Positions 46,440 through 64,000 of a DNA stretch of 64,000 nucleotides are shown one piece after another (the first letter of the stretch is position 1; each line of letters begins with the position of its first letter). Location: NCBI RefSeq assembly GCF_016433145.1, contig NC_058131.1, forward strand, positions 284,514,695-284,578,694, read 5' to 3'. The position numbers and the translations under genes are program-made. The DNA is from Gracilinanus agilis (lineage: Eukaryota). Under the pieces are notes generated by a model. That model searched no databases, was not told where the DNA came from, and saw only the letters and a list, made by a program, of their open reading frames with translations.

Positions 46440-46518
46440 CCTTTTCCAAANNNNNNNNNNNNNNNNNNNNNNNNNNNNNNNNNNNNNNNNNNNNNNNNNN
46501 NNNATGTGTATAAGAGAC

Positions 46519-46736: not shown

Positions 46737-46801
46737 TTAGTCATTTATATCCAGATCAAATTCAGGATACAGCTCCTTGGTAGTGACCCCTCTGATGCTG
46801 G
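46737..46801 (-). CDS. SWI5: SWI5 exon 5 (last, 65 nt coding)
   Basis: ctcttccag|CCAGC; ASIRGVTTKELYPEFDLDIND*; TAA at 46739-46737. Confidence 0.96.
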
Positions 46802-49277: not shown

Positions 49278-49759
49278 CTGTCTCTTATACACANNNNNNN
49301 NNNNNNNNNNNNNNNNNNNNNNNNNNNNNNNNNNNNNNNNNNNNNNNNNNNNNNNNNNNNNNNNNNNNNNNNNNNNNNNNNNNNNNNNNNNNNNNNNNNN
49401 NNNNNNNNNNNNNNNNNNNNNNNNNNNNNNNNNNNNNNNNNNNNNNNNNNNNNNNNNNNNNNNNNNNNNNNNNNNNNNNNNNNNNNNNNNNNNNNNNNNN
49501 NNNNNNNNNNNNNNNNNNNNNNNNNNNNNNNNNNNNNNNNNNNNNNNNNNNNNNNNNNNNNNNNNNNNNNNNNNNNNNNNNNNNNNNNNNNNNNNNNNNN
49601 NNNNNNNNNNNNNNNNNNNNNNNNNNNNNNNNNNNNNNNNNNNNNNNNNNNNNNNNNNNNNNNNNNNNNNNNNNNNNNNNNNNNNNNNNNNNNNNNNNNN
49701 NNNNNNNNNNNNNNNNNNNNNNNNNNNNNNNNNNNNNNNNNNNNNNNNNNNNNNNNNNN
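49278..49759. other. Tn5 adapter remnant (49278-49293) plus assembly gap (N, 49294-49759)
   Basis: CTGTCTCTTATACACA is 16 nt of the mosaic-end reverse complement and lies directly before the Ns. Confidence 0.95.
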
Positions 49760-51517: not shown

Positions 51518-51612
51518 CTAATTTTCCCATTAACATCTGGCCCACATCTTTAATGTCATTGTACTCATGAAGCAGGGAAATGTGGTCCTCCAACTCAGAC
51601 ACAACATAGCCT
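51518..51612 (-). CDS. SWI5: SWI5 exon 4 (95 nt)
   Basis: tgtttcag|AGGC...TTAG|gtgagt; GYVVSELEDHISLLHEYNDIKDVGQMLMGKL, the Swi5-domain signature. Confidence 0.97.
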
Positions 51613-61540: not shown

Positions 61541-61589
61541 AGGAGATCGAAAAGATGCTGAATGTCGTTTGGAGAGTCCCAGTCGTGCC
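61541..61589 (-). CDS. SWI5: SWI5 exon 2 (49 nt)
   Basis: ttgctttccag|GGCACG...TCTCCT|gtgagt; (R)ARLGLSKRHSASFRSP; phase 2 to phase 0 fits exon 3; the FRSP end matches the remembered human GAFRSP. Confidence 0.88.
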
Positions 61590-62134
61590 CTGGAAAGCAA
61601 CCAAGGAAAAGGGGTGATTAAGGACCCAGAAATTGTGGCAAGAAGGCGACCCTTCAAAGTTACCTGAGAGCCAGTGAGGGGGCAAGTGGGAAAGGGAAAC
61701 TGAATCAGATTATTTGGGCAAGGGCATTTGAGAAGTGATGGAGACTCAAAGGTAAGGAAGAGTAGCCTACAAAGGAAGACAGGTCTATAAATCTCCCAAA
61801 GGGGCGAAGAGTCTCTGGGGAAAGAGGTGTCAATGGAAAGGATTGGAACTTTGGGTTGAGATCTTTAAAGGGAACAAGGTCTCTGATGGGATTCACCAGT
61901 CCCTTGAGACCAGGGTTTCTGAAGTGGGTGGGATCTTAAAGAAGGCGGGTCTTTAAAAGGTATGAAGTCTCGGATGATACCAATACAAAAAGAACAAGCA
62001 TTTATTAGCGCCCACTATGAGCCAAGCCCGGTGCTGGGTGCTATAGGAGGAGGGGTCGTTGAAGGAGGCTGAGGTCTCCTGAGAAGGAAGTTTCAAAAGT
62101 GCCTGCTCTTATGGGAGTCTTGTCCTCGTCGCAC

Positions 62135-62196
62135 CTCCGGAGGCCCGGAGGCCCGGGCTCCCCTCCCGAGGGTCTCTGCAGTGCGCGGGGCTCCAG
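62135..62196 (-). CDS. SWI5: SWI5 exon 1 coding part (62 nt), proposed CUG start
   Basis: GCAGCC-CTG-G at 62196-62194; (M)EPRALQRPSGGEPGPPGLR(R); donor CGGAG|gtgcga in phase 2. The five exons total 393 nt = 130 aa + stop. There is no ATG on the minus strand in this exon or for ~400 nt upstream. Confidence 0.78.
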
Positions 62197-62495
62197 GGCT
62201 GCCCAGGAAGTGGAGATGCGACAAGGTTCGCTCCCAGAGCAGCGCGTTCTCGAAGAAGGTCCTAAAGAATTCGCGCCAGCGAAGAGAAGGCCGGGAGAAG
62301 ATAGGAAGGGCTAAAGCGAAGAGGCGAGTGGGCGGGGCGGGGCGACGCACGCGCGAGTGGGCGGGACAGGCGCAGGCGCAGACGCAGGGGAGCGCAGGGC
62401 CGTCCGACCCCGCCCTTCGCCCTCCCAATGGGAGGAGCGGGCGCGGCGCGGTGGCTGCCGGATGGAATGCCGCGGTGGTTGCCGGGATCACGGTG
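62197..62495. promoter_or_regulatory. SWI5/GOLGA2 bidirectional CpG-island promoter
   Basis: 300 bp between the starts; ETS CAGGAAGTG at 62204-62212, GC boxes at ~62330-62342, NRF1-like GCGCAGGCGCA at 62370-62380, CCAAT at 62425-62429. Confidence 0.85.
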
Positions 62496-62532
62496 ATGTG
62501 GCCCCCCCCGCCTTTCCCCTCCCCGGCCCGGG

Positions 62533-62580
62533 ATGGCGGACGAGACCCGACAGAGCAAATTGGCCGCGGCCAAAAAGAAG
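62533..62580 (+). CDS. GOLGA2: GOLGA2 (GM130) exon 1; gene continues beyond the window
   Basis: [16 protein letters not shown]|gtaaac matches the GM130 N-terminus [16 protein letters not shown]. The upstream MWP ATG at 62496 is 37 nt away and so out of frame. Exon 2 was not found before 64000. Confidence 0.93.
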
Positions 62581-62976
62581 GTAAACGCTGCCAGAGCAGC
62601 CCCTATACCCGCAGTCTCGGCCCCGCCCCTTTCCTCTTCGCCGCTTGGGCCCTGACAGACCCCCTCTCGGATCCAGTCTCTTCTTGGTCCCCTCAGGTCC
62701 CTACTGATTCCCTTCCGGATCTCCTCAGATCGCCCTCCTGATCCACCTCGCGCCTCCCCCGCCGGTTCCTGAAGGGCCTTCACCAGTCTCCCTCCCCAAT
62801 CCCCTCAGGGTCCTCATCTCAAACCCCGCAAGTCTCTGTTCTTGATCCCCGCAGACCCCGCGCCTCGAACCCCCCAGGACTTCCTCAAACCCCTGGCGGC
62901 CCGCGCCCCTCCCCCGCCGCCCCCTTGGTGACTTTGGGCCCGTGACACCCTCTCTCCGGGCCCGGGCCCGGGCCCG

Positions 62977-62984
62977 TGACGTCA
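62977..62984. promoter_or_regulatory. Full palindromic CRE TGACGTCA in GOLGA2 intron 1
   Basis: Exact consensus inside the CpG island, directly after a (GGGCCC)3 array. Confidence 0.5.
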
Positions 62985-64000
62985 GGCCCAGCTGTTGGCC
63001 TCTCCGGAAAGGCCTCCCCTCCTGCCACACACAGCTGGTGCCGGAGAGAGATGCCCCCCTCCTTGTCTCGCTGCCCCGGGAACCTCCCTCCCCCATTCCT
63101 CCCCAAAATCCCGACACCCTAGAAGGGGCCCCCAAGATGAAGGCTTGGGCAAGCCAGCTGTTAGGCCTGCCCCGCCCGCCCTATGGGAATCCGACGCCTT
63201 CCTGGATTTCCTCCCTCAGGGCCCTTCCCAAACCCTCTTTTCAATCCTGTTCACCCAGGATCAGACTCCCCTTTGCCTCAGATCCAGGCCTGGGGTTCCA
63301 GAGTTAGGGACGGTGGGAACTGGAGCTAGGGTTGGGGAAGGTATGTGTGGAAGGACTACATATGTGATATTATTTGGTGGGGGTAGAAAATTGTTTCTCT
63401 CTTCTTAGAGTAACTCCTATGAGGAGGATTTGGAATGTGGTTAGGTAACCATCCCCCTTCCCAAGTTGTCATTATAACCTCTTGGCCTGGGAAAATGGAC
63501 AAGATATTTAAAATTACTCCCTCTTGGGAAATTCTTGATTCCCTTGGGAACATACATTCAGAGGCTGCCCAAAGACCTGGAGTGACTATCACTGTGCAGA
63601 TTAAGAAGCCTATTTTACATTGATGATCATGATGGATTATAATGATCAGTAATTCCTAAATTTATCTAGTTCTTGATTCTTAAGATCTCAAAGAATTCAA
63701 AACATGTTTGAGAAGTGAATGAGAGTATTATTTCTGCCCAGATTCCAACTCTTTTGAAATGTTCCTGGTTTCATTTTTCAACTTTTCCCTCCACACACTT
63801 ATTACCTAAATTACTAGAACCATTATCCCCTTTACTCATTGCTCTCTATGTCAAGATATGCTCATCTATCAGGGGAATGGAGAGGACTTAAAATGGGGGG
63901 AATTCTATTAGGTTGGAAGAGAAGTTACTTTTGAGGGGGTAACAAAGGATTTGGAGTTGGGATACCTAAGATTGAGTCCAGGTTTTCACATTTAATTATC

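What the first reader, a model, noticed from the sequence alone, without database searches (positions are those of the whole stretch)
62135..62313. SWI5 (RAD51 mediator subunit) appears to be translated from a conserved CUG codon
Seen: exons 2-5 are intact, but the exon 1 frame has no ATG back to an in-frame TAG (62313-62311), and there is no ATG in any frame on the minus strand for ~400 nt upstream of the donor. A CTG at 62196 has optimal context (GCAGCC-CUG-G), is followed by GC-rich self-complementary sequence, and gives a 130-aa ORF. The first in-frame AUG is Met76, which would remove about half of the coiled coil; earlier AUGs in exon 3 are out of frame and stop within 15 codons. From memory, the long human annotation contains ALDP...PGLRR, matching ALEP...PGLRR here with the Leu exactly 20 codons before the same donor, while the short mouse protein starts at an AUG in exon 3 that is absent here. 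Inference: non-AUG initiation is ancestral in therians, keeps SWI5 limiting for the SWI5-SFR1 complex, and makes homologous recombination sensitive to start-codon stringency (eIF1/eIF5/BZW). The human CUG may already be annotated in some databases; I cannot check.
Basis: partly seen in the sequence, partly recalled or inferred. Interest (0 to 1): 0.85.

Follow-up and report, generated by a model that had tools for sequence, protein, structure and literature searches.

The report
SWI5 starts at conserved CUG codon
The opossum gene for the DNA-repair protein SWI5 has no usable AUG and almost certainly starts translation at a CUG codon conserved across mammals, but this same start was already detected in human cells, so it confirms known biology.

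Summary
On the minus strand lies a five-exon SWI5 orthologue, head-to-head with GOLGA2. Its conceptual translation is identical to NCBI's "partial" SWI5 model of Gracilinanus agilis. There is no ATG for 682 nt upstream of the exon-1 donor. The CTG at 62196-62194 (context gcagccCTGg) opens a 130-codon frame. The first in-frame ATG is codon 76, inside the Swi5 domain and after three out-of-frame ATGs.

Comparative DNA supports the CTG as the start:
- The codon exactly 62 nt before the exon-1 donor is CTG, in context gCC-CTG-GA, in 8 of 9 therians examined. These are four marsupials, sloth, rabbit, oryx and bat.
- In the hare it is ATG. In the wombat the NCBI model starts with Met there.
- The 62 nt carry no indel. 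Frame-breaking indels and in-frame stops 8-13 codons upstream lie just before the codon.

It is not new. A supplementary table of human N-terminal proteomics lists SWI5, CTG, peptide MDPLAPLNPLIR, which is the orthologous codon. Akamatsu and Jasin (2010) already suspected a non-AUG start in mouse. Ensembl-derived models begin with Met at this codon in several species.

The proposed dosage and start-stringency role is untested. The "special" downstream RNA structure is no more stable than shuffled sequence.

The parts
62194..62196 (-). Proposed CUG initiation codon of SWI5 (codon 1 of the 130-codon frame)
   Evidence: Searches show the codon and its context. The same codon, 62 nt before the donor, is CTG in 8 of 9 therians and ATG in Lepus. 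The human N-terminal peptide starts at the orthologous CTG.
62193..62202 (-). Kozak-like context gcagcc-CTG-g (G at -3, G at +4). The core gCC CTG GA is shared by all eight CTG-bearing therians.
62135..62196 (-). Coding part of exon 1: 20 codons plus 2 nt, ending at donor AG|gtgcga
   Evidence: It is exactly 62 nt with no indel in nine therians. Variable columns by codon position are 12/7/16.
62311..62313 (-). In-frame TAG 39 codons upstream of the CTG. It bounds the open frame, and NCBI's partial model starts right after it.
62197..62310 (-). 5' leader between the TAG and the CTG. It is open in frame but not conserved as coding sequence.
   Evidence: Alignment A1 shows indels of 13, 1, 25 and 9 nt among marsupials. 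The only in-frame near-cognate codons are ATC and ACG in weaker context.
61541..61589 (-). Exon 2 (49 nt), encoding the conserved ...FRSP segment
54717..54838 (-). Exon 3. It holds three out-of-frame ATGs (54810, 54801, 54753) and the first in-frame ATG, codon 76 (54724-54722).
51518..51612 (-). Exon 4, the core of the Swi5 domain
   Evidence: Pfam PF07061 at E = 2.5e-12, profile positions 35-60 of 80
46737..46801 (-). Exon 5 coding part with the TAA stop
   Evidence: Pfam Swi5 profile positions 63-79.
62533..62580 (+). First coding exon of GOLGA2 (16 codons, then gtaaac). It is divergent from SWI5, and its ATG lies 337 nt from the SWI5 CTG.
   Evidence: Read. A GOLGA2-type gene (PF15070, PF19046) sits head-to-head with SWI5 in every fetched locus.

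Best explanation
The window carries the SWI5 orthologue of an opossum. Its translation is identical to the Gracilinanus agilis SWI5 model. SWI5 is the small partner of SFR1 that stabilises RAD51 filaments.

The mRNA is transcribed from a CpG-island promoter shared with GOLGA2 and has an AUG-free leader. Scanning 43S complexes initiate with Met-tRNAi at the CUG at 62196-62194, which sits in a strong context (G at -3, G at +4). This gives a 130-residue protein. Its first ~55 residues are a proline- and arginine-rich extension, and residues ~56-128 are the Swi5 domain.

Ribosomes that leak past the CUG meet three out-of-frame AUGs in exon 3 before the in-frame AUG76. Little or no functional protein can therefore come from any AUG.

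What is shown: the gene structure, the lack of an AUG, the conservation of the CTG, its context and its distance to the donor across therians, and its replacement by ATG in the hare.

What is taken from the literature: a human N-terminal peptide with Met at the orthologous CTG, and a mouse endogenous protein larger than its AUG forms.

What is inferred: that this opossum actually initiates there.
For: Gene structure and missing AUG:
- Swi5 domain mapping: Pfam matches residues 94-166 of the 168-residue upstream-extended translation. That equals residues 56-128 counted from the CTG. S. pombe Swi5 (PDB 3viq_B, residues 10-81) aligns to the same stretch. AUG76 would therefore remove about 20 residues of the domain.
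- NCBI found no start. The window's upstream-extended translation is identical to the model 'SWI5 homolog, partial [Gracilinanus agilis]'.
- Many other mammalian NCBI models are also 'partial'.

DNA-level conservation:
- The codon 62 nt before the donor is CTG in Gracilinanus, Dromiciops, Sarcophilus, Sminthopsis, Choloepus, Oryctolagus, Oryx and Rhinolophus, always as gCC CTG GA.
- It is ATG in Lepus, where -3 has become C.
- The block GGCAGCCCTGGAG is invariant in the four marsupials. Frame-breaking indels lie directly upstream and none downstream.
- In-frame stops lie 8 codons upstream in sloth, 9 in Sminthopsis and 13 in Rhinolophus. The sloth has no other in-frame near-cognate codon in between.
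- The next in-frame CTG (codon 6) is not conserved.

Protein models:
- Of 76 mammalian models that contain the motif, the residue is L in 63, M in 12 and V in 1. The M is always residue 1 of its model.
- Wombat XP_027725503 starts with M at this position, while the brushtail possum reads L.

Literature:
- Human SWI5 is listed with CTG, N-terminal peptide MDPLAPLNPLIR, at +196 of NM_001040011 (PMC9789052 Supplementary Data 3).
- Endogenous mouse Swi5 runs larger than the 89- and 121-residue AUG forms, and the authors suggest a non-AUG codon (PMC2954829).
Against: - There are no transcript, ribosome-profiling or proteomic data for this species. The transcription start site and the exon 1-exon 2 junction rest on NCBI's model and on conservation.
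- The wombat ATG is inferred from the annotation only, because its DNA could not be fetched.
- The platypus has no CTG at -62. It has GCG CTG GAT at -38, which fits only if a 24-nt indel is assumed.
- Amino-acid constraint on codons 2-20 is modest, with many non-synonymous changes.
- An out-of-frame CTG in good context lies 41 nt upstream, at 62237.
- The original paper behind the human peptide (Van Damme 2014) is not held. The sheet labels in the secondary table look swapped.
Confidence: 0.8

Rival explanations
1. SWI5 protein in this species comes from transcripts with a different, AUG-containing first exon spliced to exon 2. The CTG exon would then be a leader or a minor isoform.
For: - Alternative first exons with AUG exist elsewhere. 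Primate models start MGEG... and join exon 2. Mouse has two alternative first exons. The sloth and Sminthopsis NCBI models use other AUG exons.
- In the window, minus-strand ATGs at 63096 (good context, ORF beginning MGEGGS...) and 62817 could join exon 2 in frame through a GT at 62746.
Against: - Both ATGs and the GT donor are absent from Dromiciops, Sarcophilus and Sminthopsis (alignment A2).
- They lie in GOLGA2 intron 1, on the far side of GOLGA2 exon 1. That differs from the eutherian exon-1a position.
- NCBI's RNA-supported model for this species found no complete AUG model.
- In mouse, both AUG forms are smaller than the endogenous protein.
Confidence: 0.07
2. Initiation is non-AUG but occurs mainly at another near-cognate codon, or is spread over several. 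Candidates are the in-frame ACG at 62247 (147 residues), the CTG at 62181 and the CTG at 62127.
For: These codons are in frame and upstream of the Swi5 domain. The codon aligned with the ACG is GTG in Dromiciops, which is also near-cognate.
Against: - None has both a purine at -3 and G at +4.
- The ACG region is deleted in Sarcophilus. In Sminthopsis it lies upstream of the in-frame stop that sits 9 codons before the CTG.
- CTG codon 6 is CTA, CCA or CAG in eutherians.
- The human peptide starts exactly at the orthologue of 62196.
Confidence: 0.08
3. Translation starts at AUG76 and yields a 55-residue truncated protein, or the gene is losing function in this lineage.
For: It is the first in-frame AUG.
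Against: - Three out-of-frame AUGs precede it, and its context is weak.
- It removes about 20 residues of the Pfam domain and the equivalent of S. pombe Swi5 residues ~1-31.
- Exons 1-3 keep an open, indel-free frame and 92-94% identity with other marsupials.
Confidence: 0.03
4. The CTG is an assembly error or a private variant of an ATG.
For: Wombat and hare carry Met/ATG at this codon.
Against: The same CTG is present in three other marsupial genomes from independent assemblies and in four eutherians.
Confidence: 0.01

Closest known systems
[quoted passage not shown] 2014, as tabulated in PMC9789052 Supplementary Data 3)
   Same: It uses the orthologous codon, the Leu of ...ALDP..., 62 nt before the same exon-1 donor. 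The context is of the same gCC CTG GA type seen in other eutherians. The N-terminus is Met followed by an acidic residue.
   Different: The human RefSeq mRNA also has a lineage-specific upstream in-frame AUG giving a 235-residue model, so there the CUG form counts as an N-terminal truncation. The opossum has no upstream AUG at all, so the CUG is the only route to a full Swi5 domain.
Mouse Swi5 (Akamatsu and Jasin 2010, PMC2954829)
   Same: It is the same gene and the same problem. The endogenous protein is larger than any AUG-initiated cDNA product, and the authors name a non-AUG codon as a possible cause.
   Different: Mouse has alternative first exons with AUGs giving 89- and 121-residue forms that complement the knockout. 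No such conserved AUG exon was found in marsupials.
Genes translated only or mainly from a conserved near-cognate codon, such as EIF4G2/DAP5 (GUG), TEAD1 (AUU), and the MYC and FGF2 CUG extensions (recalled from general knowledge and from the Ivanov 2011 list reproduced)
   Same: They share a conserved near-cognate codon in strong context, coding conservation that starts at that codon, and occasional replacement by AUG in some lineages.
   Different: SWI5 is not in the Ivanov list shown, nor in the held text and supplementary files of the PhyloCSF/ribo-seq study apart from that borrowed proteomics table. Its extension is short and only moderately constrained.

Membership tests
Swi5 family (Pfam PF07061), vertebrate SWI5 orthologue | Swi5 domain detected above the curated threshold | tested here: met
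   88.1 bits against a cutoff of 22.1, E = 4.3e-25, on the translation identical to the window's. Exon 4 alone scores 47.1 bits.
Swi5 family (Pfam PF07061), vertebrate SWI5 orthologue | Orthology by sequence and synteny (head-to-head with GOLGA2) | tested here: met
   92-94% identity to wombat, possum and Dromiciops SWI5. GOLGA2 exon 1 lies on the opposite strand, and the same arrangement is seen in all fetched loci.
Swi5 family (Pfam PF07061), vertebrate SWI5 orthologue | Forms a complex with SFR1 and stimulates RAD51 | not testable with these tools
   There is only the sequence alignment to S. pombe Swi5 in the Swi5-Sfr1 crystal structure 3viq.
Conserved non-AUG (CUG)-initiated mammalian coding sequences | No in-frame AUG upstream of the essential domain in the mRNA | tested here: met
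   There is no ATG in any frame from 62816 to the donor or in exon 2. The first in-frame ATG is codon 76, inside the domain.
Conserved non-AUG (CUG)-initiated mammalian coding sequences | Near-cognate codon conserved in position and identity across distant species | tested here: met
   CTG in 8 of 9 therians at DNA level and ATG in 1. L or M in 75 of 76 protein models.
Conserved non-AUG (CUG)-initiated mammalian coding sequences | Strong initiation context (purine at -3, G at +4) | tested here: met
   gCC CTG GA in all eight CTG-bearing species.
Conserved non-AUG (CUG)-initiated mammalian coding sequences | Reading frame conserved downstream of the codon but not upstream | tested here: met
   The 62 nt carry no indel in nine species. 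Upstream there are indels not divisible by three and in-frame stops 8-13 codons away. The codon-position bias of 12/7/16 is weak.
Conserved non-AUG (CUG)-initiated mammalian coding sequences | Direct evidence of initiation (initiation-site profiling or an N-terminal peptide with Met at the near-cognate codon) | not testable with these tools
   Not available for the opossum. For the human orthologue a peptide is listed in a published supplementary table, but the primary paper is not held.

The most novel reading that the evidence does not exclude
Mammals lost the ancestral amniote AUG of SWI5, which turtles still use about 45 codons before the same donor. Since then they have made this RAD51 mediator almost exclusively from one CUG. 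On this reading, selection has held the codon as CUG rather than AUG for more than 160 million years because sub-maximal output that depends on start-codon stringency matters. SWI5-SFR1 dosage, and hence homologous recombination, would then respond to eIF1, eIF5 and 5MP/BZW levels.
Probability: 0.15. Interest if true: 0.6.

Novelty: already known. Interest (0 to 1): 0.35.

Why it matters
- Annotation. NCBI labels SWI5 'partial', or invents species-specific AUG exons, in many mammals including this opossum. The 130-residue CUG-initiated protein is the form that is consistent across mammals.
- Recombination research. Work so far has used the 89-residue mouse AUG form, and the annotated human model is the 235-residue form. 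Neither is likely to be the main natural protein.
- Mechanism. A RAD51 mediator made only from a CUG would be a clean case for asking whether start-codon stringency tunes a DNA-repair pathway. Nothing here shows that it does.

Tried and rejected
- Alternative AUG first exons. Minus-strand ATGs at 63096 and 62817 could join exon 2 through a GT at 62746. I rejected them as conserved features because the ATGs and the donor are missing in three other marsupials.
- Start-enhancing hairpin. Folds of the 62 nt after the start codon in six species are stable only because of GC content (z from -1.35 to +0.78). The predicted structures differ between species.
- Absence of ATG as a signal. It is not significant within 179-286 nt.
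- Assembly error. Rejected by the cross-species alignment.
- Wombat, sugar glider and elephant DNA could not be fetched because the files are too large. The wombat ATG therefore stays unverified at DNA level.
- Literature. Searches combining SWI5 with near-cognate, CUG or start-codon terms gave only the Akamatsu and Jasin remark. SWI5 is absent from the supplements of PMC11317171 and from the held supplements of Yeom 2017. The supplements of PMC5749180 and the Van Damme 2014 paper are not held.
- The search of earlier findings returned nothing near this place.

Full report
**What is in the window.** The minus strand between 46.7 and 62.3 kb carries a five-exon gene.
- Exon 1 ends at 62135 (donor AG|gtgcga). 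Exon 2 is 61589-61541, exon 3 is 54838-54717, exon 4 is 51612-51518, and exon 5 is 46801-46737, ending in TAA.
- All junctions are canonical. Counted from the CTG at 62196 the frame is 393 nt, or 130 codons.
- Pfam Swi5 (PF07061) matches exon 4 alone at E = 2.5e-12 and the full translation at E = 4.3e-25. The match covers residues 56-128 in CTG numbering. S. pombe Swi5 of the Swi5-Sfr1 crystal structure (3viq_B, residues 10-81) aligns to the same stretch.
- On the plus strand, 337 nt away, is the first coding exon of GOLGA2 (62533-62580). The two genes are head-to-head in a CpG island of 64-68% GC.
- The translation of the frame from just after the upstream TAG is identical, over 168 of 168 residues, to NCBI's 'DNA repair protein SWI5 homolog, partial [Gracilinanus agilis]'. 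The window is therefore that opossum or a very close relative, and NCBI's pipeline found no start codon.

**Check of the observation.**
- The in-frame TAG is at 62313-62311.
- There is no ATG in any frame on the minus strand from 62816 down to 62002.
- The CTG context is gcagccCTGg.
- The first ATGs of the spliced mRNA are three out-of-frame ones in exon 3, whose frames close after 14, 11 and 9 codons.
- The first in-frame ATG is codon 76, in weak context. It lies about 20 residues inside the Pfam domain.

Two points are weaker than stated.
- The lack of ATG in the 179-286 nt around the finding is what this composition gives by chance. P is 0.46-0.55 there, and only 0.0035 for the full 682 nt.
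- The 'GC-rich self-complementary' sequence folds at -28.4 kcal/mol, but shuffles do as well (z = +0.59). The predicted structures differ among species.

**Comparative evidence.** A protein search returned 236 SWI5 homologues, the listed ones nearly all mammalian. A striking share of the NCBI models are 'partial', meaning no start was found. These include Dromiciops, Gracilinanus, Petaurus, Trichosurus, platypus and many eutherians.

I fetched the locus DNA of nine other species.
- The codon lying exactly 62 nt before the exon-1 donor is CTG in Gracilinanus, Dromiciops, Sarcophilus, Sminthopsis, Choloepus, Oryctolagus, Oryx and Rhinolophus. It is always embedded in gCC CTG GA.
- In Lepus europaeus it is ATG, and there -3 has changed from G to C.
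- The 62 nt contain no indel in any of the nine therians. Variable columns fall 12/7/16 on codon positions 1/2/3.
- In the marsupial alignment the block GGCAGCCCTGGAG is invariant. Immediately upstream there are gaps of 13, 1, 25 and 9 nt, so the frame is not kept there.
- In-frame stops lie only 8 codons upstream in the sloth, 9 in Sminthopsis and 13 in the bat. The sloth has no other in-frame near-cognate codon in that interval.
- The next in-frame CTG (codon 6) is not conserved.
- Of 76 mammalian protein models that include this segment, the residue is L in 63, V in 1 and M in 12. Every M is residue 1 of its model.
- The wombat RefSeq model XP_027725503 starts with Met at this position, while the brushtail possum, from the same order, reads ...AAL-EPRAL.
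- The platypus has no CTG at -62. It has GCG CTG GAT, an ALD motif like the eutherian one, 38 nt before the donor. This is the same codon only if a 24-nt indel is assumed.
- Turtle models start at an AUG about 45 codons before the same ...LRR| junction. The exon-1 coding segment is therefore older than mammals, and the AUG was lost.

**What is already known.**
- Akamatsu and Jasin (2010) reported that both AUG-initiated mouse Swi5 cDNAs (89 and 121 residues) give proteins smaller than the endogenous one. They named a non-AUG initiation codon as a possible reason.
- Supplementary Data 3 of Fedorova et al. 2022 reproduces a table of N-termini found by N-terminal proteomics. It lists NM_001040011, SWI5, start codon CTG, peptide MDPLAPLNPLIR, +196 from the annotated start, class 'n-term-trunc'.
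- By its gene content and the main text, that table is the Van Damme et al. 2014 set, although the sheet labels look swapped. The primary paper is not held.
- The peptide is the eutherian ...A-L-DPLAPLNPLIR... segment with Met in place of the CTG-encoded Leu. It is therefore the orthologue of window codon 62196.
- UniProt entries of Ensembl origin give 130-residue proteins starting with Met at this codon in cattle, a Bos hybrid, lion, cat, lynx and meerkat. Other models from the same species read Leu there. I infer that database models already use this CUG.

**Most likely mechanism.** The leader has no AUG. Scanning complexes start at the CUG, helped by G at -3 and G at +4. Leaky ribosomes are then consumed by the out-of-frame AUGs of exon 3. 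The product is a 130-residue protein. Its conserved second residue is acidic (Glu in marsupials, Asp in eutherians), which also supplies the +4 G. Initiation with methionine is supported for human by the peptide. For the opossum the whole step is inferred. Confidence is about 0.8.

**Rivals.**
- An AUG-bearing alternative first exon is the serious one, because eutherians have such exons (primate MGEG... models, mouse, sloth).
- In the window, ATGs at 63096 and 62817 could join exon 2 in frame through a GT at 62746. Neither the ATGs nor the donor exist in Dromiciops, Sarcophilus or Sminthopsis.
- Other near-cognate codons (ACG 62247, CTG 62181, CTG 62127) have poorer context and are not conserved.
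- A start at AUG76 would truncate the domain.
- An assembly error is excluded by the other genomes.

**What is not supported.** No test made here bears on the idea that the CUG keeps SWI5 limiting or links recombination to eIF1/eIF5/BZW. ATG at this codon in the hare, and apparently in the wombat, shows that an AUG is tolerated. Retention of CTG in eight of nine lineages, with no synonymous drift, does show selection on the codon itself.

**Verdict.** This is a correct and careful observation of a real feature, and its main interpretation is right. It is the opossum orthologue of a CUG start already seen in human proteomics, suspected in mouse and used in database models. The mammal-wide DNA comparison made here, including the hare ATG, adds detail rather than a new kind of thing.

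Noticed in passing
window 62900-63010 (around the TGACGTCA at 62977-62984): A block in GOLGA2 intron 1, upstream of SWI5 on the minus strand, is almost invariant among four marsupials. It contains the window's only palindromic CRE (TGACGTCA) and repeated GTCAC motifs. It looks like a conserved regulatory element of the bidirectional GOLGA2/SWI5 region.
   Followed up: partly
window 63096-62728, minus strand: A Gracilinanus-specific ATG in good context (ggaggaATGg) opens a 123-codon ORF beginning MGEGGS...SETRR. This resembles the start of the eutherian alternative SWI5 first exon (MGEG[ST]AGPGPRSLETR). The ATG is absent in three other marsupials and lies on the other side of GOLGA2 exon 1, so the resemblance is probably due to G-rich composition.
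   Followed up: partly
window 62440-62530: The segment between the GOLGA2 start codon and the SWI5 leader (ccacatcacc..gatcccggca..) is conserved from platypus to marsupials and eutherians. A CCAAT-type ATTGG box follows it in the marsupials. This probably belongs to the shared promoter or the GOLGA2 leader.
   Followed up: no
window 62237-62235, minus strand: An out-of-frame CTG in good context (G at -3, G at +4) lies 41 nt upstream of the proposed start and opens a 74-codon frame. It is present in Dromiciops and Sminthopsis but not in Sarcophilus. It could act as a weak upstream overlapping ORF.
   Followed up: partly
window 46451-46503 and 49294-49759: There are two runs of N. One lies about 230 nt downstream of the SWI5 stop codon and one in intron 4. 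Neither touches a coding exon, and both were left as they are.
   Followed up: no
L005 (Lepus) 1485-1503 compared with L007 (Oryctolagus): The hare, which has ATG at the start position, has C instead of G at -3. The frame just upstream also differs from the rabbit's. This is consistent with relaxed need for a strong context once the codon is AUG.
   Followed up: partly
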